Source: Hamiltosporidium tvaerminnensis FI-OER-3-3 (Eukaryota > Fungi > Microsporidia). From it: 64,000 nt of DNA. The stretch lies in assembly GCA_022605425.2 (NCBI GenBank), contig CM061250.1, positions 372,001 to 436,000 on the forward strand, read 5' to 3'. The translations under genes were made by a program, and so were the position numbers. The first letter of the stretch is position 1, and every line of letters starts with the position of its first letter. The notes under the pieces are model-generated. The model worked only from the letters and a program-made list of their open reading frames with translations. It was not told where the DNA came from and did not search any database. Shown piece by piece: positions 24,601-62,909 of the stretch.

Positions 24601-27497
24601 AAAGGCAGTAGTTTTAAAGAAAAAAAGAACATGCGTAATTTTTTTTACCTATAGTTTAATTGCTTTAAATAGATTTTGGGACGCTTATCGGAATGTGAAC
24701 TTGTAAACAGATTTGTTGATTTTGTTTAGATGAAAGAATTCGAAAAACCTAATAGATTAATCTAGTTATTTTATAAATTTTCTCTTTCATTGTTACTTTA
24801 TTATTTCCATTTGTTAAAATACTTCTATCTTATTTGAAAACTACGAGAACAAATATATTTTCTTAATGTTACATTCTTGGTTTACACTTTATACATATAA
24901 CGAGGTCTAAGGAGAGCTTAAAAAATCAAAAATTAATACAGCATTTATTTGTTTAAACCTTTTCATTACCAAAATGTATTTTACTTTATACTGGCTTGGG
25001 AAGAATCAACAAAGTATAAATCAAAATTTTAAAATATTCAAGTCAAAAAATATAAATACATGTGATTCAACCAAACTGAGATATTGTAAATACATCAGAT
25101 AAAACAAACGAAGACGTGGTACAAACAAAACTACCTATGGCCTAGATTCAATTATGATGTTCTTATAATCGTCTTTGTTTTATTATATTTTGTTCAAAGA
25201 TATCATAAACTTGTAGATATCAAGCATAATATAAAATATGTTTAAATTATAAACTTTATTTTAAAATCTAGAAATTGATTATATCTATAATTTCTTGATT
25301 AACTATTTACCACAAGAAAAATCTAAAACAAAATTACAAACTGTATGTTTTAAGGTGATATTTTTTGAAATAATAGTCATTTAATTATCTAATCGCGCTT
25401 GTAAATATATATAAAAGATGTTAGGCTAGCAATTATTTATGTAATAGATATATTATGTAAAATTTATTTAAAATTTATTGATCATATTCTTGTATTTACT
25501 AATCAGAGATTAAAAATGCTTTATAAATAATATGTTATTGGGTCGAGTTAAATTGATCTTTACAAATGACTATGCAAAAACAAGCTACTATTATTTAAGA
25601 TATAATATGTTAAAAATATTAGATTTTTGGAATCTGACATGAGGAACAAGCGGTAAGTCTCATTTATTTCCATAGATGTGTTTACTGCGGATATAGAACA
25701 ATTTTCTTCCTATAAATGTATAAAATATTTGTCCTGTATATTATCAAGAAATGATATCTCATATTTTATACGACATAAAATGCTTTAAAATGCTACTAAC
25801 TTGATGATCAAAATATTTTGTAAGTTTATGTTGTTTTGAAAATAAGATTGTTTAACTAAATATACATGCTGAACCTACAAGATTTTAAGCCTTAAACTGC
25901 ACAATTTAAATTAGATACATTAAGACAACGTTTTTTGGCTGTTTTTTTGTTCAAAATCGATAAATCAAATAAAATTTAAATGTCATATGTATAAGAAATT
26001 AATCTATAAAAGCTTATTTACAAATTTATGGTTTTTTATGCTTAAATAGCTCAGTAATATAAAATAGCTTATATTATCTAATGTAGAATATTCTTTTCGT
26101 TTATAAGAAGATTTTTATTTAAACTTACAATTTTAAAATAATAGGTAAATATGTGTATTAAATCGTACACAGAGTTGATCTCGAATGGGAAACGAAATTA
26201 ATTAAACAAATCATTTAGATTTGTGTATACATATTTTTTCAGGGTATATAAATCAGATTGAAATTTTTTTTGTAAAGTTTATACAAATTAATAAAATTAT
26301 TGGAAAATATATCTGCAATCACGAAAATGTTATTTGCTATACAAATCTTTCTATTTTTAATAGATTAGTAAAAAGGATGTATAAATTATGGTTATCTGAA
26401 TATAATAGGTTCTAAATATGGTTGAAGTTAACATTCATTCAGATATAAATAGTACTAACTCGGTCTAACATATTTAACGCATATAATTTCTTGGTATGTT
26501 CATTTAATCGAAATAATACAAAAAGAAAATTATTTTCTTCTTTGGTATTAGCTGTTTTTTTGAATACAAAAGATAGTAATAATTGTATTTAGTAAACCAA
26601 TATTTTATATATAGTTGAGCCACTAAAAATCATTTAGTATAATACATATAAATCCTCGAACATCGAGATAAAAGGGAACAGTAATAAGCAAGTAAATAAG
26701 TAATAATGCATCTAAGAGTTATATATGAATTAAATGTGTATGTTTATAATTTTCAGGTTTGGATTTTATGATAGGTTACAAAAAAATTGTCAGAAGATTA
26801 CAGATTTCAATAAACTTTGAGGATTAATAAATGCTAAATCACTGATATAATATATTTAAAGAATTTTTAACGTCACAAGTGAAAAAAATTATGATCTTAC
26901 TTATGCTAATAATACGATCCTTTGGGTAATTGAGACGGATTTTTTAGGATTGAAAAGACTTTTTAATATATAATATGTTTTTACAGAAATAGTTGTTTAA
27001 AAAAAATATCTTAAACAAAATACCAACGTGTATTTTCTAAGATGGGTAAGTATCGTTAAATAGGCCCAATCTCTGCAGTTGCGTTAGCACCGCAGAATAA
27101 GCAAAAATTCTACTAAAAAGACTAATACAAACACGTTTGACCCTTACTACAGTTTAAGCTGTAATATATTTTAACTTATTTCTTTTAAGTCTAATAACCT
27201 GTTATATTTATCTCAGGCTACAATTTTAATTTAGAGATTTCGTGATATCGGAGATTATAATTACTAAGTTATCGTTGTATAACATTTTTTGCGTGCATTG
27301 TTTTACATAAAACTTGCTGGAAGTTTTCAAATTTCCGATAAACTAAAACCTTGGCATATCATGCCACGAATTCGGCGGATAGCTCTATCGCGGCTCGCTT
27401 TTGGCCACGGCTCGCATTTTAGTATCTGCTATACTGATTGTACCCGAATTTAGTCAGTTATTCTTACGTACACTTCATATATACATTGCAAAGTAAT

Positions 27498-27567
27498 AAC
27501 TGTAACTCCGCTAAAGCTTGTGTTACTACTCTCGCTGGCCTTAAGCCCGGATAAAGTAGGAGGGTTG
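27498..27567 (+). ncRNA. twister self-cleaving ribozyme (type P1), partly degenerate
   Basis: U|AA-CUCC-GC...G-CUGG-CCUUAAGC-CCGG-AUAAA-GUAG-GAGGG-UUG matches the twister core UAACUCCGC...CCGGUCCCAAGCCCGGAUAAAGGAGGAGGG recalled from plant and Schistosoma RTE-associated twisters. P2 is 27506-09/27556-59 (one mismatch), P4 is 27535-38/27547-50, T2 is GC 27510-11/27545-46. Confidence 0.8.
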
Positions 27568-30555
27568 AGCATTGGGCTTGCGATTCTATCTGCAAAATCA
27601 TATTGTTACGAAACCAAAATGAAACAACGAAATAAATAAAACAATTTTTGACAAAAATATAAGCTTTATTAGAACCTGGAATTGACTCAGTCTTTTCAGA
27701 GCAGGAGCACTGTCTAATCTTAAGCAAAAATTTAAAATGTAGTATATATATTGTTTTCATAAGAAAATACGATGGAAAAGAACAGACGCTTTAAAAATAA
27801 AAAATTTACTGTTTTTAAATGTGGAAATACAAATTATATGTTTATATCTGCCTTTGAGGTAAAAAAACAATATTTTGAAGACGATTTTATACTATTGGCT
27901 TATACACGAACGACTATGTTAAATTAGGATATAAGATCGATTCTTTAACCCTAACCTTGATATGTGTACATGTTCCAAAATAAGATACAAAAGAAAATGA
28001 TAAAGACAGTTTCATTGATATGTTAGAAGAAATATAAAAATCTCTTCGCTTGACATAAAAAAATTATAATAAACCTTAAGGCCAGAAAAGGTGGAGAAGC
28101 ATATAAATGACCCAAATAGGATGAGATAGCATTCATTTAGAATCTGATATTAATGGTTTAAAATTAAAGATTTCGCAGTAAGCAAAAATATGACTGTTTC
28201 ACGGGCTTTTCAGCGCATAAGAGAATACACAAATGAACTTTGAGATCACTTGATGAAGAGACGTATTTTAAATTGACTATGTACTTATTGATTTGGGACG
28301 CGGATTAAATGTTTTTTATGTCCTTATTTTTAGAGGAGCCGACATAGATAGTTATCATTTCCTTGTGAGAATAAAATACAAACTGCGAAACTAAAACTCA
28401 AAACAATCAAGGACTCATAAATCTTATAGGAACGATTGCTGTAAATTAAAAGACATCTATATCAGGAAAAAATTTGCTAATAAAATGAATAAACTTTCAA
28501 GCCAAAAAACATTGAATTACCAGATGGGGTTGATAAACATTGTATTCACATCAAAGAATCAATTAAACTAGGGTCTGATGTCTTATCGGGATATAAGAAA
28601 TACAAAAAGCAAGACATCTGCTAGGCTCAAGAATGCGTGGATGTAATCGGGGCTCGAAATTTGGCTAGATCAAAAGCACTACAAGAAAAAACTGGAAACA
28701 CTCCGCAAGTACTCAGCGGGCAAGAACTAAAGCATTCCATATTCTAAGAAAGCAAAAAAACAAGAAAAGAACATAAAATTCGAAAATAGAAAAAATGACC
28801 GAAAGCAAAGAGTTCCGTAAAATGTATGAAAATAGTGGGAATGCGAGAAGAGTTTTTCAAGCCCAAAATACGGTCGTAGAAAGTACCGACTGATTTTAGC
28901 TTACGGATCCTAAAAAGTTTCTAACACGTTGGGCCAAATATTTTGAAAAGAATTTTAATCACAAAATGAAATGTGAACCAGCGATATAATACGAGAGATA
29001 TTTATTGAAGAAAATCGTAATCTTATTGAAGATCAGAGAACAACGGTTCCAGAGACAACGGATGCTATAATGAGTTTAAAGAACAAATCGGCGGCTGAGG
29101 AAGACAAGCTTATAGCTTAGATTTAAAAAATGAGGAGATTCCTTAATAAACAACTTTCAAAACTTAATCAAAGAAATACAGATCCAGAGAAAAATACCTA
29201 GTAAATGAAATTTGATTCTGATACTTCCTATTCATAAAAAAAGATTAAAAACACTATGCTCTAAGTATAGGGATTTATATTTTGAGATTGAATCCCAAAT
29301 TCTTACAAAAATAATTTAAAAAAGATTATATCCATAAGCAGAAAGCGTCTTGGAGATTTTCATTGTGGGTTTACAAGAAACCGATCTACAACCGAAAAAT
29401 CTTTGCAGAAGAATTATGCTTGAAAATACTATGAAACAAAAAATCACAACACATAATCTTTGTTAGACTAGAAGCAAACATATGACAGTATTGATCCAAG
29501 GTTTTTGTATAGACACTTAGAAAGTTTAAAATGACTATGAAAATTATTCGTTTAATCAAAATAACACTGATGCAAACAAATGGAAAGGTATTATTAACAG
29601 GTAATCTACCTAGTTACTTTAACATTAATATGAGACTAAAAAAGGGTGATAACTAATCTTCGTACTGTCATTCTACCACTAGAGGAAACAGTTTGATAAT
29701 TGGCAAAGAACACTGATTGTAGAATATTTAATGGAATCACACAATATATAGCATATAAAGATGATCTTGCCATTGTTGGAAGAAAACAAAAATATATACA
29801 ATGCACTTTAAGAATAATAGCGTCATAATCAGGATATGTTTGACTTAGAATACACTAAAGGAAAATAAAATATATGCTCATGTCTTTATTCCCGAATACT
29901 CAAAGATCTCTTTCAAAATTAAAAAAATATATTTGATCGAGTATCAAGCTTAAAATAGCTGAGATTTCTTCTGAACGAGAATAACATAAATTCTCTTGTG
30001 ATTAAAGAAAGAATACAAGCAGGCAACAAGACGTAGTTTGCTCTGCCACACTTACTGATGTCAAATATGAAAATGGAAATACGAAAAGGCAAATATATAG
30101 GACGGGGATTAAGCCTGTCGTATTGTAAGCCTCCAAAACATCGGTGATGACAAAAAAAGACGAGGCTCTGCTAGACATATGCGAAAGAAAGATACTGAGA
30201 GAATATAGACCCAATGCTTGAAAATAAGAGGTGGGAATTGGAACAAATCATAAAATATACAGCTTGATGAGATAACAAATTTGATTATCATTATGAAACA
30301 GAGAAGACTTAGATGGCTAGGGGATGATGAAAGAATGTCGATAAAAAAAGCTGTTAGCAAATTCTTAGATCTGCACATGAAGGTAAGAGAAGACAAGGTA
30401 GGAGAGTAAGATTTGCTTAGAATAGGCGAAAAAGGATCCAAGAAACTCAATATTTTGAAAGAAAAACTTGATGCACAATAAAAAAGCATGCTGAAGAATC
30501 AGAAAGAAAACCTGAGCTCCCCATAGACGGTTTTGCCGCTGTGTTCGTTTAGTAT
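27504..30555 (+). mobile_element. full-length decayed RTE-clade LINE (APE endonuclease + reverse transcriptase)
   Basis: Broken APE motifs ICVHVP (~27960), IDYVLID (~28272) and RGADIDSYHFLV (~28331). Broken RT motifs ILPIHKK (~29221), CGFTRNRSTT (~29364), KQTYDSI (~29470), LKKGD (~29636) and IAYKDDLA (YADD, ~29748). Length ~3.05 kb. Candidate TSD AGTAATAACTGT (27492-27503) / AGTAATGAATGT (30556-30567). Confidence 0.88.
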
Positions 30556-32005
30556 AGTAATGAATGTATTTATTCAATTGCGTTTCTTTCAATTTAAAGT
30601 TTTTCTTTTTGAGTCTATTATTCCCACTATACATACTTTTTTCTGTGCATTCTGCGATTTAAATTTAATTTACTAGTTAAGTTGGAATCTGAGAATAAAC
30701 AAAACTACCCTTGTGATTCATTAAGGCTATAAAAAAGAGTTTTTCTGTATGATAAAGCGTCTCTCATGTCCTAAGAACCTTAAAAAAGGGCAGGATTGTC
30801 TTGCGAAATAAAATCAAAAAGAATTGTTTTTAAGTTTTTCAAATGCTCTCAATGGTTTTATTGACCGGTTTAAAATATCCTTCGCTGAGTCTAAATAAGA
30901 CTTCTGGTAATTGGCAAGTCTATTATTCAATTTACCATACTCGAAATCCTCGAATTTTCCTGCTTTTATATTAGGAAAAAGACCCAATCTTTTATAGACT
31001 GCAATTTTTTATTCATACATAGGTTTTTGATTAATTGGACAATTATATAGTAAATATCGCGAGATTTATAATTAACTATGTGAGATAAATACTATAATAA
31101 AAGCTGTGTATAACGTCTGGTATTTCTTTTTTTTTCTTGAATTGTCTATAGATTAGGCATCATCCTGAAAAGGGCGCTAAATAACATCTTTTCATAACCT
31201 AATAGGTCTAATGCTCTATAAATGTATATTTGGAAGTTTTAAATTGATTTTTTGTATTTTAAGATAGAAAAGATTTCATAATAAATAATGTATTTCTCGA
31301 TTCGTTTAATGCAGTTGAATTTAGAACTGATGAACTTAGGTAAATGAAAGGTATAGCATAAGAGTAAAAGGCTAAAAAAAATAGAAACAAAATGCTGGAA
31401 CTAAATAATTTAAAAAATAAAAAGATTTTAGCTAAATTGCAAATAGTTTATGTGATTTTGCGATTTTTACTCAACTTTATTGTGTAAAACAAGACATAAA
31501 AAATAATAAGAAAATAATGAATTTTATTGGGCAGAATGTATGGAAAAAAAAACGGAAACATAAAGACAATTAATGACAGTTTTAGTGCCAAAAATCCATT
31601 TTTCAATGTTTTGACTTCGTTTAAAGAAAATGGCTTTTTAAACAGCTTTTTAAAAAAAGTACGCGAATATAATACGAAATTAATTTTGGTTCCTGAGTCC
31701 ACTATAATAAAATATATTGTAATATATATCATTAGTCTTCATATTTGGGAAATAAGATTTACAAGATTTTTAGTATAAAACTGCCAATTATACGAGACTT
31801 TAAATTTATAATTAAAACTTTAAAAACCAAATATTTTATTCATCACTTAAATCCATGAACTCAATTTCTTTAACTTGTTTAAAAAAGTTTGCAATGTTCC
31901 TTACATTTTCAAAACATAACTTAAACAAATCAAAAAACATAGAATTCATAAAAATTATTTCTTTTACTTTGCCTTTTAAAATGCCGATTCTTACAACTGA
32001 AATAC

Positions 32006-36052: not shown

Positions 36053-37222
36053 ATGTCAAATTCTTTTTCAGGTAAAAATACCAACGAGAACAAATATGAT
36101 TTTCATGTAGGTGAAACACCGGAATATATAGAGTGCGAAAATGACAATGTTTTGAAGTGTCTTGTAGAAACATCTGGATCGCATGATGAAAATCTCTCAC
36201 TATCCACCATTCCAACTCTGAGGAAACAAAAAGGTTCTATTAATGATCGGGAACGCATAATTGAAAAGACATTAGAAGGCTATTCTATGTCCGCAATTGC
36301 CTCGATGTATCGAATAAATTACCAGACGGTTAATAGTATCGTTAGACGATATTTAAAAACTGGCTTGGTATTTGTCGATAAAAGAGGTGGTGATAGGCGC
36401 TCAAAGTTAAGCTTGGAAATAAAAGAGAGCTTACAAACCTATGTTGATTTGGAGTGTACAAAAACCCAGTATGGGTTGGCAGAATGGGTCAGGTGTACAT
36501 TTAATGTTGGTGTTGCAAGTAGTACAATTGATCGCGCATTAAGAGACTTCCCTTACACTCTAAAGCGTGTAACATTAGTGCCTGAGCGTAGAAATACACT
36601 TTCGACAATTGAGCTAAGAACCAATTACGCAACTAGTTTTCGTGAGTTGGAGGTTGATAACGATGACAAAAACTTTGTCTTTTTAGATGAAGTTGGGTTT
36701 GCAGTAGTCACACGCCCCAGTAGAGGTCGTAACATGAGAGGTGAATCTGCATACCTATCTGTAACAGCCGCTCGAAGTAGAAATATTTCAGTAGTCGCAG
36801 CAATGAACAAATATGGTATGATATACTATAAGATTCATGAGAGGGCCGTAAATGGTGAGGATTTCAAATTATTTATTAAGGAGATTAATGAAAGTTGTCA
36901 AAGGCAAGGAATTTTGACTCCAATATTTGTAATGGACAATGCGAGAATTCATCACTATCGTGGATTGAATGATGATGAGGAAATTGCTTCGTATCGAATA
37001 AAATATCTTCCACCTTACTCTCCATTTCTTAATCCAATTGAGAATGTATTCTCAGTCTGGAAAAATAAAGTAATTCGAGGTGGTGCTCGTACTGAGCCTC
37101 AGTTGAGAATATTAATTTATGAAAAATTTAATGAAATCACGGGAGAACATTGTAGTTCTTTTTACCGTAAAATGTTAGGATATTTGCAAAAGGCTGAGGT
37201 AGGGCAAATGATTCTTGAGTAA
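36053..37222 (+). CDS. IS630/Tc1-family transposase (HTH + DD34E), 389 aa, intact
   Basis: FLDE, MDNARIH and LPPYSPFLNPIE, with 34 residues between the second D and the E. HTH-like SMSAIASMYRINYQTVNSIVRRY. CCC immediately before the ATG. Confidence 0.95.
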   Translation: MSNSFSGKNTNENKYDFHVGETPEYIECENDNVLKCLVETSGSHDENLSLSTIPTLRKQKGSINDRERIIEKTLEGYSMSAIASMYRINYQTVNSIVRRYLKTGLVFVDKRGGDRRSKLSLEIKESLQTYVDLECTKTQYGLAEWVRCTFNVGVASSTIDRALRDFPYTLKRVTLVPERRNTLSTIELRTNYATSFRELEVDNDDKNFVFLDEVGFAVVTRPSRGRNMRGESAYLSVTAARSRNISVVAAMNKYGMIYYKIHERAVNGEDFKLFIKEINESCQRQGILTPIFVMDNARIHHYRGLNDDEEIASYRIKYLPPYSPFLNPIENVFSVWKNKVIRGGARTEPQLRILIYEKFNEITGEHCSSFYRKMLGYLQKAEVGQMILE

Positions 37223-48500: not shown

Positions 48501-49066
48501 TATTTATTTCAATCAATGCACTAATAGATTGTATGATATTTTGTTTTCAAAATATACGGAAGGATAAGTATTGTTTTACTTCGAGCATAGATATTTCAAT
48601 TATTTATATATTTAGCGAATTCATACACGACTTAACAATATTTTTTTAGGTATTAATCTATAATAGATTGATTTAAACAAAGACTATACTATTAAAAAAC
48701 ATTAGATAAGTTTATACCTGTGTAATATAGCATTTAAATGGTTGAAAGTGTTTTACAATATCTTAATAGCATGTAATTACACTGTTATTATTTACAAATA
48801 TTAATGATTTATTTAATTTGAAAGAAACATTCAATATATTAATTAAAAAAAATTTTACATAATTAAATCAATTATACATAAATAGAAATAATAATTATTG
48901 CTAATTAGAGGGCCTAGGATTATAGAATTTATTTCATGTACGAATAACATTACAAAAACATAAAAGAATTCTTTAATCAAAATATATTTTTATCAAAATA
49001 ATAATTGTTTTTAATTTGAAGATAAAAACAATAAAACTGTATTTAATGAAACAGAAATTATCATCC

Positions 49067-51601
49067 ATGTATTTTCTACTTTTTTTAAAGAGTATACATA
49101 GCTCCTATAAATATTACGACAGGAATATAAATGGTGTCGAATATATGAGAAAGTCAAGATCGCTTAAAGAATCTTGGGTAGGATTACTATATGTTATAGG
49201 TTTAGGGTTTCTAGATATTGTAAATTGTGCGAGTAAATCAAAAAATGGAAATATTATTTTTGGACTCCTAGATTTGAATTGGGAAACGGGCATTTCTAAA
49301 AGCGAGCTTTCTAAAGTAAAATATTGGTTATCTCGTTCAAGTGAGAGTGAACAGCTTGGATTTTGCTCTGGTAAGCATAGATTTAAGTGTAACAATGTGA
49401 GCATGCCCAACCTAGTCTGTTCATTGAAAATATCCTACCGGAATCACAAGCCTTTACGTTCTTTTGAGGTCAATTACAAAGAAGACTGGAAGGTTCAATT
49501 TCGCGTTCTAAACAGATTTCTATTAAAAGATTTAGATAAGCCTTTCTTGTTTAATATTTCTATGGATGTAAATTGTCAAGAATTTGAAATGTTTGTTAAA
49601 AGTGTAACATTTGATCCAAGTTTTGCAGTCTTAAATATTGGGTATGACCTTTTTTATAGATTTTTAAGACTCTTTGATGCTTTGGATCCAATCAGTAGTA
49701 TAAATTTAAGTAAATTCTATTCTGATTTGCTAAGGAAATGTTTAATGGGAATAAGTTTCATTAATATCATGGCTGATCCTGAGCACTACATGGTAAGATA
49801 TTTTGAAGATAGGAATAGATCTCGGTCATTTATGCCCTTTTTTTCCGTTATAAGTGATTCAATAGACGCATGTTTTAATCCCGAAACTTCATATTTATCC
49901 TTATTTAAAAGAACAAAGCATTCTACCGATCAGTGCTTTAGGTACGCAATAAATGTTTCGAGATTAATTTTGAAAATTTCTATCAGTTCTCTAGAATTAC
50001 TCTTGTCCGGTTTTAAAGCAAACGAATGGTCTGTTTTTAATTGGCTTTTATCTGTAACGAAGATTTCTGGCTTCTGCATTGATGATACCGAGGTTACATG
50101 CAGTGAAATGAAAATACCCGGTGTATGTGACATTTTAAACCCCGAAACAACCATAAGAAGCGCTGTTCCTTCAAAAACAATATCACTCGGTTTCTTTTCA
50201 TTCTTAGCTGATACAAATGTGAAATCGATTCAATATTTGAAATTTGTAAATGTTGTTCCACCATTTGATTATTTAGATCAAAATATTAATAAGGCTTCTG
50301 TTTCATATTTTGAGGTTGCATATAGCTCAATCGAGGAATGCAACAGGATAACAGCTCTCTTACAGAAAATGTGGGAACCAAACGCATTCAAGTTAACCGG
50401 ATATAAAATGAATTTCGATGATATTAATCGAATTCTTTATTCCAATATAAAAATTTTAGTATTGAAAGAGTGCACATTGGATGTGGATACAGATTGGAAG
50501 CCTATAAGAGACCGAAAAGGTGAGTTTAAATTAATTGGCAGTCTAAAACAACTGAATATTTCTTCCTCTATATTTCCAGTATGCTTAGTTCAGCTTTTTT
50601 TGATGTCTGCGAAACTTGAAAATATATATCTTAATTCTTTGAAATTTACTGCTTGTCTATCTTTCGATCCATTTTCAAATACAAAAAGAAATTTGGATTG
50701 TCTTGAGGCTGATGAATACATCCCGAATGAGTGTTTAAATACATTTTTTACAGGCGAAATATCAGTAAATTCTCTGTATTTACGCGGAACGGCTGATTTT
50801 GAAAGCGTAAGATTCATTTTTGAATCTGTCAATCTACATAAATCGGTTAAGTACTTGAATTTGAGCAAAAACTCTTTAACAGTTGAACACCTGAATCTTA
50901 TTGCAAATTTCTATTGCCTAAAACGCCTAAGTTTGTCTAGAAGTCTTCCTTCATCGATGGAAGGACTAATTCACTCAAAGATCTTTGAAAATATAACTCA
51001 TTTGGATATATCACATAACGATATATTTTCACAAAACTCAGTTTACATAATCTGGTTTACAAATCTAAAGGCGCTTGATATGTCAAGTGTTAGGATTGGA
51101 TGTTATATTTTGAGTTCAATTCTTTCTGAAAAGCTGAAAAATTCTCTTAGTTACCTAGATATTTCGGGTGTCGATCTAAGTCTTGCGGATTTTAAATGTA
51201 TTTCTGAATGCAGAAATCTTAGAAATTTGATATTTAGCTATGGAAATAGTTGTCCACTGACTACATACAGTGATGTACTGAAAACAGCATATGTGCGAGA
51301 AAAATTAAGTATATTGCGTATTGAAACCACTGGTGATATTGATATTGATGATGTATTGTCTTTAGCCGACTTCGCTGATTTATCAGGAGTAAAAATTACA
51401 TGCCGAACAATCATTAATGAACGCAAAAGAGAACTCGTTGTTTTCAATTTTAAAAACCCAGAATTTCGAATCCAATTTGTTCTAAAAATATATTTTGTCG
51501 ATAAGTTTATCGAAGAAATATTCAATAATCTGTTTAAGCTTTGTTATTGCTCTTTTACGTATGAAAAATTTCTTCCCTGTATAAATTTTTCTGATTATTA
51601 A
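49067..51601 (+). CDS. lineage-specific leucine-rich repeat protein, possibly secreted or membrane-anchored
   Basis: C-terminal LRRs (VKYLNLSKN, LKRLSLSRS, ITHLDISHN, LKALDMSSV, LSYLDISGV) and hydrophobic N-terminal segments. Start MYFL chosen by alignment with the paralogue at 62909. Confidence 0.85.
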   Translation: MYFLLFLKSIHSSYKYYDRNINGVEYMRKSRSLKESWVGLLYVIGLGFLDIVNCASKSKNGNIIFGLLDLNWETGISKSELSKVKYWLSRSSESEQLGFCSGKHRFKCNNVSMPNLVCSLKISYRNHKPLRSFEVNYKEDWKVQFRVLNRFLLKDLDKPFLFNISMDVNCQEFEMFVKSVTFDPSFAVLNIGYDLFYRFLRLFDALDPISSINLSKFYSDLLRKCLMGISFINIMADPEHYMVRYFEDRNRSRSFMPFFSVISDSIDACFNPETSYLSLFKRTKHSTDQCFRYAINVSRLILKISISSLELLLSGFKANEWSVFNWLLSVTKISGFCIDDTEVTCSEMKIPGVCDILNPETTIRSAVPSKTISLGFFSFLADTNVKSIQYLKFVNVVPPFDYLDQNINKASVSYFEVAYSSIEECNRITALLQKMWEPNAFKLTGYKMNFDDINRILYSNIKILVLKECTLDVDTDWKPIRDRKGEFKLIGSLKQLNISSSIFPVCLVQLFLMSAKLENIYLNSLKFTACLSFDPFSNTKRNLDCLEADEYIPNECLNTFFTGEISVNSLYLRGTADFESVRFIFESVNLHKSVKYLNLSKNSLTVEHLNLIANFYCLKRLSLSRSLPSSMEGLIHSKIFENITHLDISHNDIFSQNSVYIIWFTNLKALDMSSVRIGCYILSSILSEKLKNSLSYLDISGVDLSLADFKCISECRNLRNLIFSYGNSCPLTTYSDVLKTAYVREKLSILRIETTGDIDIDDVLSLADFADLSGVKITCRTIINERKRELVVFNFKNPEFRIQFVLKIYFVDKFIEEIFNNLFKLCYCSFTYEKFLPCINFSDY

Positions 51602-60401: not shown

Positions 60402-62909
60402 CTATCCAAGTGTTTCTTCGTAAATAATTGAAATAGAATAATTACAAAATATCTCTCTTAAGATTTCTACAACCTGAACATCTTTAATAAACTGCTTTAG
60501 AACAAATTGAATTCGGAAATCCGAATAAATAGAATCGTACTTTATGATGTCTTTTTCTCGTCTATTAAATATTGTACGACAACTAATTTTGACTTCTGAT
60601 AAATCATGAAATTCCGCTAAAGCTACGACGTCATCAATAGAAATATCAGATGATGTAGAAACATGAAGAATATTCAATCTTTCGCCTAGCAAAGTTGATT
60701 TGCAGATATCACAATATTTACCCATGAAGCAAGAACCTTCAAGGCTAAATAACAAAGTAGAAAGTCTAAAACATTCGGAAATTCTTTTAAAATTTAAAAG
60801 AGTCAAGGAAGAGCTAATAATATTCAAGTATGATAGAGAATAGATCATTTTATCTGTAAGTATCAACCCTAGTAAACTACCTCTCATTTTAACCCCAAAT
60901 AAACTAAGAGCTTTTAAGTTTTTAAACATAGTAATGTATAAATAGTTTGATAAAAAAATATCATTGTATGATACATCCAAATGTGTCAAATTTTCATATA
61001 TTTTCGACTCCATCAATCCTGCCACATTCGAAGGTAGACTTTTTGATAAATTAAGACTCTTCAGATTATAAAAATTGCCTATAAAATTCAATGAGCTTAC
61101 TGTTAATTTACAGTCACTAAAATCCAAAGACTTAACTGATTTTATAAAGTTAGGAATTTCAAAAAAGAATGCTACGCTATCAAAATCAATTATTCTACGT
61201 AAACAAAGAGAACCCACAGAAACATCACTAGTAAATAGCGCTCTTAAATATTCATTTGGGATATATTGATCGTGTTCAAAATTTTTCCAATTTCTTTTTA
61301 CGCTCAATATTTGATCGAAGGATTCACATCCAGTAAATTCAAAAGAATTTAGCAATATATTTTCCAGTTTTGTAGAGTTTAATAGCAGCTGAACGAAACA
61401 TACAGGAAACTTGGATAAAGAAATATCTAAAAATTCTAAATTTTCAGTTAATCTAAAGTCACCCCTTTGATCCCTTTTGGGCTTCCAAATGGAATCTACA
61501 TCTAATGTACAATCTTTTAAAACTAAAACTTTTATTTTCGAATAAAGTATTCTTTCGATATCTTTCGTGTTCATTTTCAGTCCGGCGACTTTGAATGTAT
61601 TAGGTTCATACATTTTTGGCAAGAGTTCTGTTATTCTCTGGCTTTCGTCAACTACACAATAAGAAATTTCCAAATAAGATACGACCCCTCTTAGTATAAC
61701 AAGGTCTAGTAAATCAAAAGAAATATCTACATTTACAAACTTTAAATATTTAATCATTCTTATATTCGATCCAGTTAGATTTAGAAAAAAATCATCTGAT
61801 ATTTTTTTAAGTGAAACTATACATTTTTCAAAGCTTTCGGAGCAAACTAAACTACATACACTTGAAACTTTGAGTTCATTAAAAGTTAATTCGGTGTTAT
61901 CAATGTAAAAACCGGAAACCTTCGTTACGGCCAAAAGCCAATTAAATGCGGCCCATTCATTGGTCTTTAAACTTCTCAGAAGTAATTCGAGAGAACTCGA
62001 AGAAATTTTGAGAATAAGATTAGCAATATCAATTGAGTCTCTAAAACATTCATCAATATGTTGCTTTTTTTTCTCGAATAAGGACAATGTCGAGCTTTTG
62101 GGAATAAAACATGCATCAATCGAGTTGATCAAGGTACAGAAAAAATACATGAAGGGCCTAATTCTATGTTTCTCATCAAAAAGATTTTCTCTGTAATGCG
62201 CGGAATCTTCAAAAATTCTAACAGAGACTTTTTCCAACAGACACTCTCTGTATAAATGAGAATAAAATTGGTTCAGATATTCACTGCTAATCGGGTCTAG
62301 AACATCTAAAATTTTTAGAAACCTATAGAAATTTTCATATGTAAGATTTTGACGAGGTGTACCGGAATCGAAAGTTAGATGTTTAACAAAAATTTGAAAT
62401 TCTTGATAACTAACATTCAAAGAGTACTCGAATAAAAATGGATATTCTTCTAACTGCATATATACAAATCTATTTAATGAACGAAATTTTATTTTCCAGT
62501 TTTCTTTATAGTTCACTTCAAAAGAATGCAATGGCTGATGGTTTTGAGATGATCTTTCCAGCGAACAAGCAAAATCTGTGATACTTAAGCCACGGCATTT
62601 AATAACATGATTTCCGGGACAAAATGTAAAAGTTTCTTCCTCATTTGAACGTGATAACCAATATTTAATTTTTTTAATCTCAACTTTATCAATATCTTCT
62701 TTCCAATTTAAATCTATAAGTGCAAACGTTATTTTTCCATCTTTTGATTCACTCGTACAAATTACAAACTGCCAAAATCCAAGACATATAAACAATAAAA
62801 ATTTGACCCAATATAAAATTATCCAGTTTGAATTTGTCATATTTATACTATTGTTTAGGTTAGTCTCAGATCTAGTAATTTTTTGGATCGAAATAAATAA
62901 AAAATACAT
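60402..62909 (-). CDS. lineage-specific leucine-rich repeat protein, paralogue of 49067-51601
   Basis: Collinear throughout with shared DLNW, KYWLSRS, SFEVNYKE.WK, LDPISS and LVLK.CTLDVD. LRRs LKSLNLSKS and LTHLDVSYN. Confidence 0.88.
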   Translation of the reverse strand: MYFLFISIQKITRSETNLNNSINMTNSNWIILYWVKFLLFICLGFWQFVICTSESKDGKITFALIDLNWKEDIDKVEIKKIKYWLSRSNEEETFTFCPGNHVIKCRGLSITDFACSLERSSQNHQPLHSFEVNYKENWKIKFRSLNRFVYMQLEEYPFLFEYSLNVSYQEFQIFVKHLTFDSGTPRQNLTYENFYRFLKILDVLDPISSEYLNQFYSHLYRECLLEKVSVRIFEDSAHYRENLFDEKHRIRPFMYFFCTLINSIDACFIPKSSTLSLFEKKKQHIDECFRDSIDIANLILKISSSSLELLLRSLKTNEWAAFNWLLAVTKVSGFYIDNTELTFNELKVSSVCSLVCSESFEKCIVSLKKISDDFFLNLTGSNIRMIKYLKFVNVDISFDLLDLVILRGVVSYLEISYCVVDESQRITELLPKMYEPNTFKVAGLKMNTKDIERILYSKIKVLVLKDCTLDVDSIWKPKRDQRGDFRLTENLEFLDISLSKFPVCFVQLLLNSTKLENILLNSFEFTGCESFDQILSVKRNWKNFEHDQYIPNEYLRALFTSDVSVGSLCLRRIIDFDSVAFFFEIPNFIKSVKSLDFSDCKLTVSSLNFIGNFYNLKSLNLSKSLPSNVAGLMESKIYENLTHLDVSYNDIFLSNYLYITMFKNLKALSLFGVKMRGSLLGLILTDKMIYSLSYLNIISSSLTLLNFKRISECFRLSTLLFSLEGSCFMGKYCDICKSTLLGERLNILHVSTSSDISIDDVVALAEFHDLSEVKISCRTIFNRREKDIIKYDSIYSDFRIQFVLKQFIKDVQVVEILREIFCNYSISIIYEETLG

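What the first reader, a model, noticed from the sequence alone, without database searches (positions are those of the whole stretch)
27492..27614. Twister ribozyme defining the 5' end of an RTE LINE in a probable microsporidian
Seen: twister core with predicted scission U27503|A27504, directly upstream of APE+RT remnants. A 10/12 candidate TSD (27492-27503 vs 30556-30567) ends exactly at that site, and the P1 5' strand comes from flanking DNA and pairs poorly. Established: twister variants process the 5' ends of RTE-clade elements such as Schistosoma Perere-3. Inference: the element inserted from a self-cleaved RNA. I do not know of twisters described from microsporidia, and the metazoan-like UTR suggests horizontal transfer from an animal host. 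This copy has a P2 mismatch (U27557) and wobble T1 pairs, so it may be inactive.
Basis: partly seen in the sequence, partly recalled or inferred. Interest (0 to 1): 0.8.

Follow-up and report, generated by a model that had tools for sequence, protein, structure and literature searches.

The report
Decayed twister ribozyme heading microsporidian LINE
A worn-out copy of the self-cutting "twister" RNA sits at the very start of a dead jumping gene in a microsporidian parasite (Hamiltosporidium), and dozens of sister copies show the element's RNA was once trimmed at exactly the ribozyme's cut site, as already shown for a flatworm element.

Summary
Window 27499-27568 (+) aligns end to end with Rfam twister-P1, though below threshold (32.1 bits against a gathering score of 67.2). 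The predicted cut is U27503|A27504.

It is one of at least 56 copies in this 21.6 Mb genome. The genome is microsporidian by its SSU rRNA, and Hamiltosporidium tvaerminnensis by a 100% protein match. The 72-nt majority consensus of 24 copies carries every nucleotide that Rfam marks as conserved. It also shares P2 (CUCC/GGAG) and the 3' P1 strand with the Schistosoma Perere-3 twisters.

Similarity between copies begins exactly at the A after the cut site. The 12 bases before the cut recur at 10/12 or better after the element's 3' end in 10 of 16 elements, against 2.5% of mismatched pairs. The window copy scores 10/12.

Downstream lie collinear but shattered APE and RT remnants, then a (TTAG)n-type tail. 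The element spans 27504-30555.

Every copy of this LINE family that matched has stops, and every ribozyme copy has at least 4 core changes, so these are relics.

Most twister copies head roughly 245-nt non-autonomous elements rather than LINEs.

Transfer from an animal host stays open. The nearest named RT relatives are insects at 30-39% identity.

This is a new member of a known kind (Liu et al. 2021). First readers flagged sister copies elsewhere in this genome.

The parts
27492..27503 (+). 5' target-site duplication (AGTAATAACTGT). Its last 4-5 bases double as the flank-derived P1 5' strand and the U at position -1.
   Evidence: 10/12 match to 30556-30567. A score of 10/12 or better occurs in 2.5% of mismatched flank pairs.
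27499..27568 (+). Decayed twister ribozyme. P1 5' strand 27499-27502; cut U27503|A27504; P2 27506-27509 with 27556-27559; L2 GC 27510-27511; P3 27512-27534; P4 27535-27537 with 27548-27550; L4 27538-27547; AUAAA 27551-27555; GAGGG 27560-27564; P1 3' strand 27565-27568.
   Evidence: Rfam RF03160, 32.1 bits, full model length. Family model R1, 53.5 bits, E 7e-14. 6 of 40 core positions differ from the family consensus and 11 of 12 core pairs are kept.
27504..30555 (+). The whole retrotransposon copy (3052 bp), an RTE-like non-LTR element with a shattered ORF.
   Evidence: 5' limit: homology between copies starts at the A after the cut. 3' limit: alignment of 16 3' ends, with the last family-homologous base at 30552 plus 3 tail bases. 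About 40 copies, mostly 5'-truncated, share this 3' end.
27569..27621 (+). Short conserved 5' UTR after the ribozyme. It includes the motif TGTTACGAAAC (27604-27614) and a candidate start codon (27619-27621) followed by an early stop in this copy.
   Evidence: Columns at least 90% conserved among 19 genome copies. The same 11-mer lies about 20 nt before the ATG of relative L084, and a near match lies in L082. Treating the ATG as the start codon is an inference from the APE alignment offset.
27912..28508 (+). AP-endonuclease (Exo_endo_phos-type) remnant, interrupted by stops.
   Evidence: tblastn with P0153 residues 110-271 (E 3e-5) and P0013 residues 229-308 (40% identity, E 2e-10). Both relatives carry PF03372 and PF00078. 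Stop-free pieces are at most 58 aa.
29122..30370 (+). Reverse-transcriptase remnant and C-terminal region, spread over three frames with many stops.
   Evidence: Collinear tblastn matches to P0013 residues 511-876 (E 1e-16), P0153 residues 530-948 and P0010. The whole-genome protein search marks this copy with 3 TGA and 3 TAA stops.
30480..30555 (+). Conserved 3' terminal region and a decayed short-repeat tail of (TTAG)n/(GTTA)n type.
   Evidence: Alignment of 16 3' ends. Sister copies end in a GC-rich motif followed by 2-4 TTAG units.
30556..30567 (+). 3' target-site duplication (AGTAATGAATGT).

Best explanation
Window 27504-30555 is a dead copy of an RTE-like non-LTR retrotransposon (single APE+RT ORF, short-repeat tail) of Hamiltosporidium tvaerminnensis. 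Its first 65 nt are the 3' product of a twister ribozyme.

Likely mechanism, by analogy with Perere-3:
1. A master copy was transcribed, probably by read-through from upstream (inferred).
2. The twister cut between the flank-derived U and the first A, releasing an RNA that starts AACUCC (inferred here from the genomic record).
3. That RNA was translated and copied into new sites by target-primed reverse transcription, leaving 8-15 bp target-site duplications that abut the cut site (shown).
4. Each new copy took its position -1 base and its P1 5' strand from the target, so P1 pairs only by chance (shown).

The same head, UTR and 3' end also form roughly 245-nt non-autonomous elements, which must have used the LINE's enzymes (inferred).

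The family is now extinct in this genome. Every copy of this LINE family that matched has stops and every ribozyme has core substitutions (shown). The window ribozyme, with a P2 C.U mismatch and two G.U pairs in T1, is probably weak or inactive (inferred).
For: Twister identity:
- Full-length sub-threshold Rfam match in the window and about 30 more genome-wide, the best at 43.9 bits.
- At least 56 matches to the family model.
- The majority consensus of 24 copies carries all Rfam-conserved residues. Outside P3 it equals published S. mansoni twisters in P2, L2, P4, L4, GAGGG and the 3' P1 strand (Table 1).
- The same 27-nt 3' half occurs in more than 120 metagenome contigs. In six of those with at least 2.5 kb downstream, long APE+RT matches follow. 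Two pass Rfam's gathering score at 68.1 bits.
- P3 covaries between lineages: 27 double-change cells and a covariation score of 0.267 against 0.147, with 0 of 500 shuffles reaching either.

The cut site is the element's 5' end:
- Information content is at most 0.31 bits at positions -20 to -1 and jumps to 1.26, 0.85 and 2.00 bits at positions 0 to +2.
- TSDs: 10 of 16 elements score 10/12 or better, against 2.5% of mismatched pairs. Four score 12/12.

LINE identity:
- Collinear APE and RT matches in the window and in 7 of 9 extended twister loci.
- 5'-truncated copies with a common 3' end and a TTAG-repeat tail.

Host: SSU rRNA of 1303 nt scores best against the Microsporidia model at 1208 bits. 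A protein match is 100% identical over the aligned 53% of the query to an H. tvaerminnensis protein.

Precedent: PMC8501958.
Against: - No copy in this genome reaches Rfam's gathering score.
- Within the genome there is no covariation beyond shuffles: 71.1% paired against 70.2%, reached by 109 of 500 shuffles. This is expected for neutrally decaying copies but gives no positive support.
- Minimum-free-energy folds of four copies do not recover the twister fold and are no more stable than shuffles, z from -0.15 to +1.48. Pseudoknots are not modelled there.
- Cleavage was not observed. Four RNA runs gave no reads on this stretch, which is no test.
- The six nearest RT relatives whose genomic or contig DNA could be scanned upstream show no twister, so the head is patchily distributed.
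- T at position -1 in 16 of 24 copies (p = 0.003) may partly reflect how copies were found.
Confidence: 0.88

Rival explanations
1. The 5' boundary is set by a transcription start site or internal promoter at AAC, not by self-cleavage. On this view the twister-like sequence serves another role, for example as a translation or RT-recognition structure.
For: No cleavage was observed. The UTR just 3' of the ribozyme is better conserved than the ribozyme itself. P1 is absent in most copies.
Against: The boundary coincides within 1 nt with the chemically defined twister cut in 24 copies. The same arrangement cleaves in vitro and in vivo in Perere-3 (PMC8501958). The consensus keeps all catalytic-core residues.
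Confidence: 0.07
2. The twister resemblance is a chance or compositional match, and the element simply has a GC-rich 5' end.
For: 32.1 bits is under half the gathering score. The control search rings weakly in 10 of 14 unrelated bacterial and archaeal genomes at E up to 10.
Against: At least 56 related copies. A canonical consensus. A 27-nt exact identity with twisters that pass Rfam's cut-off. P3 covariation across lineages.
Confidence: 0.02
3. The LINE entered the Hamiltosporidium lineage by horizontal transfer from an arthropod, possibly a host.
For: All 9 clusters with an organism name, among the 30 best-hit clusters looked up, are insects: Lutzomyia, Rhodnius, Cacopsylla, Diaphorina, Condylostylus, Parnassius, Anopheles, Zophobas. 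In the tree the Hamiltosporidium RT sits inside the insect/unnamed group, separated from the metagenome twister-LINEs at SH-aLRT 96. Transposon exchange between microsporidia and metazoans is documented (PMC4202319).
Against: Identity to the named insect representatives is only 30-39%. The query is a spliced model of a decayed copy on a very long branch (2.38) with no resolved sister. No Daphnia relative was seen. No fungal or other microsporidian references were available. Insects are over-represented in databases. A copy at 81% identity in H. magnivora shows the family is present in both species.
Confidence: 0.4

Closest known systems
T-variant twister ribozymes at the 5' end of Perere-3 (RTE clade) in Schistosoma mansoni (Liu et al., NAR 2021, PMC8501958)
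   Same: The twister sits at the extreme 5' end of a single-ORF APE+RT element. TSDs abut the cut site. The P1 5' strand is supplied by the target site. The tail is a short tandem repeat. P2 CUCC/GGAG, L2, P4, L4, GAGGG and the 3' P1 strand UUGR are the same.
   Different: The host is a microsporidian, not a flatworm. P3 differs. The tail unit is TTAG/GTTA, or GTA in the short elements, instead of GTAA. All copies here are dead, whereas Perere-3 is transcribed and its ribozymes cleave. RT relatedness to Perere-3 could not be measured.
Rfam twister-P1 (RF03160)
   Same: Full-length alignment to the model. The family consensus matches all conserved positions.
   Different: Scores of 21-44 bits against a gathering score of 67.2. 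P1 is not formed and the cores are mutated, so Rfam's own annotation pipeline would not call any copy.
HDV-like ribozymes at the 5' ends of R2, RTE and L1Tc elements, and the short non-autonomous NARTc that shares L1Tc's ribozyme head (from my own knowledge of Eickbush & Eickbush 2010, Ruminski et al. 2011 and Sanchez-Luque et al. 2011; not checked here)
   Same: A ribozyme trims read-through transcripts to define the retrotransposon's 5' end. A short non-autonomous partner carries the same head, as the roughly 245-nt elements do here.
   Different: The ribozyme class differs. HDV-like ribozymes cut at their own 5' edge, so the whole ribozyme is inherited. Twister cuts after P1, so P1 and the position -1 base must be regained from each target.

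Membership tests
Twister ribozyme (Rfam RF03160, type P1) | Covariance-model score at or above the gathering score (67.2 bits) | tested here: not met
   Window copy 32.1 bits. Best copy in the genome 43.9 bits. Same-type twisters on metagenome LINEs reach 68.1 bits. The shortfall comes from the missing P1 and from decay.
Twister ribozyme (Rfam RF03160, type P1) | Conserved core residues (UAA at the cut, L2 GC, L4 GUCCCAAGC, AUAAA, GAGGG) | tested here: met
   All are present in the majority consensus of 24 copies. The window copy differs at 6 of 40 core positions, two of them unpaired ones, and every copy has at least 4 changes.
Twister ribozyme (Rfam RF03160, type P1) | Helices P2 and P4 and pseudoknots T1 and T2 can form | tested here: met
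   Window: 11 of 12 core pairs are standard or wobble, with one C.U mismatch in P2 (C27508/U27557). Family: 71-85% of cells paired in these helices, against about 43% when the partners are slid.
Twister ribozyme (Rfam RF03160, type P1) | P1 stem closing the ribozyme | tested here: not met
   49.5% of P1 cells pair, which is about the chance level for this base composition. The window copy pairs 2 of 4. The published T-variants also lack a fixed P1 and can still cleave.
Twister ribozyme (Rfam RF03160, type P1) | Compensatory changes supporting the fold | tested here: inconclusive
   None beyond shuffles within the genome. There is clear covariation in P3 between Hamiltosporidium and metagenome copies, with 0 of 500 shuffles reaching it. 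The other helices were fixed there by how those contigs were selected.
Twister ribozyme (Rfam RF03160, type P1) | Site-specific self-cleavage between U and A | not testable with these tools
   Indirect evidence only: copy homology and TSDs end at the predicted site. RNA runs gave no reads.
RTE-clade non-LTR retrotransposon (Perere-3-like) | One ORF of about 1000 aa with an N-terminal APE and an RT, an element of about 3 kb, and no ORF1 | tested here: met
   A 3052-bp element with collinear APE and RT remnants matching 989-1003-aa proteins that carry PF03372 and PF00078. Only about 50 nt separate the ribozyme from the candidate ATG.
RTE-clade non-LTR retrotransposon (Perere-3-like) | 3' end of short tandem repeats rather than poly(A); 5'-truncated copies; variable TSDs | tested here: met
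   (TTAG)n tails. About 40 copies, mostly 5'-truncated, with a shared 3' end. TSDs of differing sequence.
RTE-clade non-LTR retrotransposon (Perere-3-like) | RT groups with curated RTE references in a phylogeny | not testable with these tools
   No named RTE, Perere-3 or BovB reference sequences were obtainable. The nearest hits are unnamed or generic insect proteins. One cluster is labelled 'Craniofacial development protein 2', a name I recall being attached to BovB/RTE-derived sequence; that is a lead only.
RTE-clade non-LTR retrotransposon (Perere-3-like) | Intact ORF (a potentially active element) | tested here: not met
   Stop-free pieces in the window are at most 58 aa. No twister or LINE locus fetched up to then holds an open APE/RT frame; the longest piece is 166 aa. 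Across the 31 genome matches to the 161-aa RT fragment, no open frame exceeds 228 aa.

The most novel reading that the evidence does not exclude
The Perere-3-type twister head is not a schistosome peculiarity. It would be an old, patchily retained feature of a broad RTE-like LINE lineage that reaches microsporidia, plants and many unidentified eukaryotes. In Hamiltosporidium it also drove a family of roughly 245-nt promoter-less, ribozyme-headed non-autonomous retroposons. The microsporidian lineage may have obtained it by exchange with arthropods.
Probability: 0.4. Interest if true: 0.6.

Novelty: new member of a known kind. Interest (0 to 1): 0.45.

Why it matters
It extends the only documented biological role of twister ribozymes, 5' processing of an RTE retrotransposon, from a flatworm to a microsporidian. 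It also shows that such heads are invisible to Rfam's threshold, because P1 is rebuilt at random at each insertion. Relaxed-P1 searches should therefore be used when annotating LINEs.

The family gives a natural record of cut-site-defined 5' ends, seen as TSDs, without any RNA data. It adds a short non-autonomous partner family. It also points to many same-type twister-LINEs in public metagenomes.

The copies here are relics, so the practical consequence is better repeat annotation and a lead for ribozyme and LINE evolution, not a live system.

Tried and rejected
- Rfam at gathering threshold on the window found nothing.
- Pfam on stop-free window pieces found nothing. One sister fragment gave only a weak RVT_1 match at 19.8 bits.
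- Minimum-free-energy folding of four copies gave no twister fold and no stability signal.
- Covariation within the genome was indistinguishable from shuffles.
- RNAalifold on the post-ribozyme UTR predicted no consensus structure. The GGCYAACA hairpin I thought I saw in L082, L084 and L088 is therefore only an impression.
- RNA evidence: no listed holder of the stretch is on record as RNA. Four raw RNA runs of 'organism B' laid 0 reads, which is no test.
The TSD test therefore uses 16 elements, not all.
- Twister search upstream of the RT-nearest relatives (Rhodnius, Diaphorina, Condylostylus and four SRA-assembly contigs) found none. Several of those copies are 5'-truncated or their contigs end in the UTR, so this is weak evidence of absence.
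- The CRISPR-DR27 match at 27577-27609 (16.4 bits, E 7.9) is chance.
- The 98-aa ORF on the minus strand at 27464-27760 is a mechanical ORF with no support.
- I built no full-length consensus and no repaired ORF of the element. The only consensus used is the 72-nt majority line that DNA alignment prints for the ribozyme.


Full report
**What is at the coordinates**

Window 27499-27568 (+) aligns over the whole length of Rfam's twister-P1 model (RF03160) at 32.1 bits. This is below the gathering score of 67.2, so the default scan of the window reports nothing. The alignment puts the U|A scissile step at 27503|27504.

- P2 is CUCC (27506-27509) against GUAG (27556-27559), with a C27508.U27557 mismatch.
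- T1 has one C-G and two U.G pairs.
- T2 and P4 can form.
- The P1 5' strand ACUG pairs with UUGA at only 2 of 4 positions.

**It is a family, and the family consensus is a canonical twister**

A genome-wide scan with the Rfam model finds about 30 sub-threshold sites, the best at 43.9 bits. A covariance model built from 24 distinct copies finds at least 56. That is a lower bound, since only 150 of 3335 candidates were scored.

The majority consensus of the 24 copies has every residue that the Rfam consensus writes in capitals. Outside P3 it is the same as published S. mansoni twisters in P2 (CUCC/GGAG), L2, P4, L4, GAGGG and the 3' P1 strand UUGR (Table 1 of PMC8501958).

Each individual copy has 4-12 changes in a 40-nt core; the window copy has 6. 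Within the genome the pairs show no covariation beyond shuffles. MFE folding shows nothing either. Both are expected of neutrally decaying copies of a pseudoknotted RNA, and they give no independent support.

Support for the fold comes from outside the genome. An exact 27-nt stretch of the 3' half occurs in more than 120 metagenome contigs, and two of these pass Rfam's cut-off at 68.1 bits. In an alignment of 12 such twisters with 5 Hamiltosporidium copies, P3 covaries: 5 of 6 pairs change on both sides, there are 27 double-change cells, and the covariation score is 0.267 against 0.147 (0 of 500 shuffles). The other helices were fixed there by the way the contigs were selected.

**The cut site is the element's 5' end**

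With 24 copies anchored on the model, positions -20 to -1 carry at most 0.31 bits of information. Positions 0, +1 and +2 (A, A, C) carry 1.26, 0.85 and 2.00 bits. Upstream flanks are unrelated between copies.

For 16 elements whose 3' ends I could locate, I searched for the 12 bases ending at position -1 within the 60 nt after the 3' end.
- 10 of 16 score 10/12 or better, and 4 score 12/12.
- Mismatched pairs of flanks reach those scores in 2.5% and 0% of cases.
- The window copy scores 10/12 (27492-27503 against 30556-30567).
- In several copies the match runs one base into the element, which a single base of microhomology or chance would explain.

P1 pairing is at chance level (49.5%). T at position -1 occurs in 16 of 24 copies (p = 0.003). 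This may reflect target preference, but also the way copies were found.

**What the ribozyme heads**

The window element runs to 30555.
- tblastn with full-length relatives (989-1003 aa, Pfam Exo_endo_phos plus RVT_1) gives collinear APE (27912-28508) and RT (29122-30370) remnants in three frames with many stops.
- About 40 copies of the body exist at 65-77% identity, mostly 5'-truncated with a common 3' end.
- That end is a GC-rich motif followed by (TTAG)n.
- 7 of 9 further twister loci that I could extend also carry APE/RT remnants downstream, in several divergent subfamilies.
- No open APE/RT frame survives in the loci held, and across the 31 genome matches to an RT fragment no open frame exceeds 228 aa.

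**Short elements**

Most twister copies (those with the P3 loop 'ATACGATGAG') share only the twister head and 5' UTR with the LINE. They then jump to the LINE's 3' terminal motif, with a (GTA)n tail and their own TSDs. From the anchor offsets, their length from cut site to tail is about 245 nt. They look like non-autonomous retroposons that borrowed the LINE's head and tail.

**Organism**

The SSU rRNA is 1303 nt long and scores best against Rfam's Microsporidia model (1208 bits). An RT fragment is 100% identical, over the aligned 53% of the query, to a Hamiltosporidium tvaerminnensis protein, and 81% identical to one of H. magnivora. The library search found no paper that links twisters with microsporidia or Daphnia. 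TE surveys of microsporidia do not mention ribozymes or RTE.

**Relatives and the transfer question**

A full HMMER search with the H. tvaerminnensis RT model gives 1464 hits. The best non-Hamiltosporidium hits are 34-45% identical. All 9 clusters that carry an organism name, among the 30 looked up, are insects, and their representatives match at 30-39%.

In a quick tree the Hamiltosporidium sequence lies unresolved on a long branch inside the insect/unnamed group. That group is separated at SH-aLRT 96 from the metagenome twister-LINEs, which themselves form two lineages.

Two unnamed SRA-assembly contigs among the nearest relatives share the UTR motif TGTTACGAAAC just before their ATG. No twister was detectable upstream of the relatives I could scan.

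So twister heads are scattered across this LINE group. Exchange with arthropods is plausible but not shown.

**Comparison with what is known**

The arrangement and inferred mechanism match Liu et al. 2021 for Perere-3. There too the twister sits at the 5' end, TSDs abut the cut, and the target site supplies P1. This is therefore a new member of a known kind in a new phylum, preserved only as relics.

First readers of this scan flagged sister copies on other pieces of the same genome. I did not rely on those notes.

**Limits**

- No cleavage or RNA data were obtained.
- No curated RTE references were available.
- I built no full-length consensus or repaired frame.

Noticed in passing
L050 (G000:C6:427048-427118+ and about 180 nt downstream); also L043, L044, L051-L056, L058, L059: Roughly 245-nt non-autonomous elements: twister head, short 5' UTR, the LINE's 3' terminal motif and a (GTA)n tail, flanked by 8-15 bp TSDs. 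They make up the majority of twister copies in the genome.
   Followed up: partly
L091-L170 (metagenome contigs), e.g. L152:3094-3165(-), L100, L155: More than 120 metagenome contigs carry the same 27-nt twister 3' half. In six with at least 2.5 kb downstream, long APE+RT matches follow. L152 has an Rfam-passing twister (68.1 bits) and an open 1029-aa frame.
   Followed up: partly
L099:659-744(+): A snoRNA Z102/R77 match (81.3 bits), a family I recall as plant-specific, lies about 90 nt upstream of the twister match on this metagenome contig. That twister-LINE copy may therefore sit in plant DNA.
   Followed up: no
window 27604-27614; L084:31-41; L082:81-91: The 5' UTR motif TGTTACGAAAC, at least 90% conserved among genome copies, recurs just before the ATG of the RT-nearest SRA-assembly contigs. 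Its function is unknown, and RNAalifold predicted no structure.
   Followed up: partly
G000:C15:526059-526130(-) and C15:558412-558483(+); C3:1089558 and C4:305942; C3:454268(+) and C3:519307(-): Pairs of twister copies are identical including their flanks, which points to recent segmental or inverted duplications of tens of kb or between contigs.
   Followed up: no
window 36053-37222 (+): An intact 389-aa ORF with HTH and DDE_3 transposase domains (E 1e-26): a possibly live DNA transposon about 5.5 kb downstream of the dead LINE.
   Followed up: no
window 49016-51601 (+) and 60402-62909 (-): Two long ORFs (861 and 835 aa) with no Pfam match at E up to 0.001.
   Followed up: no
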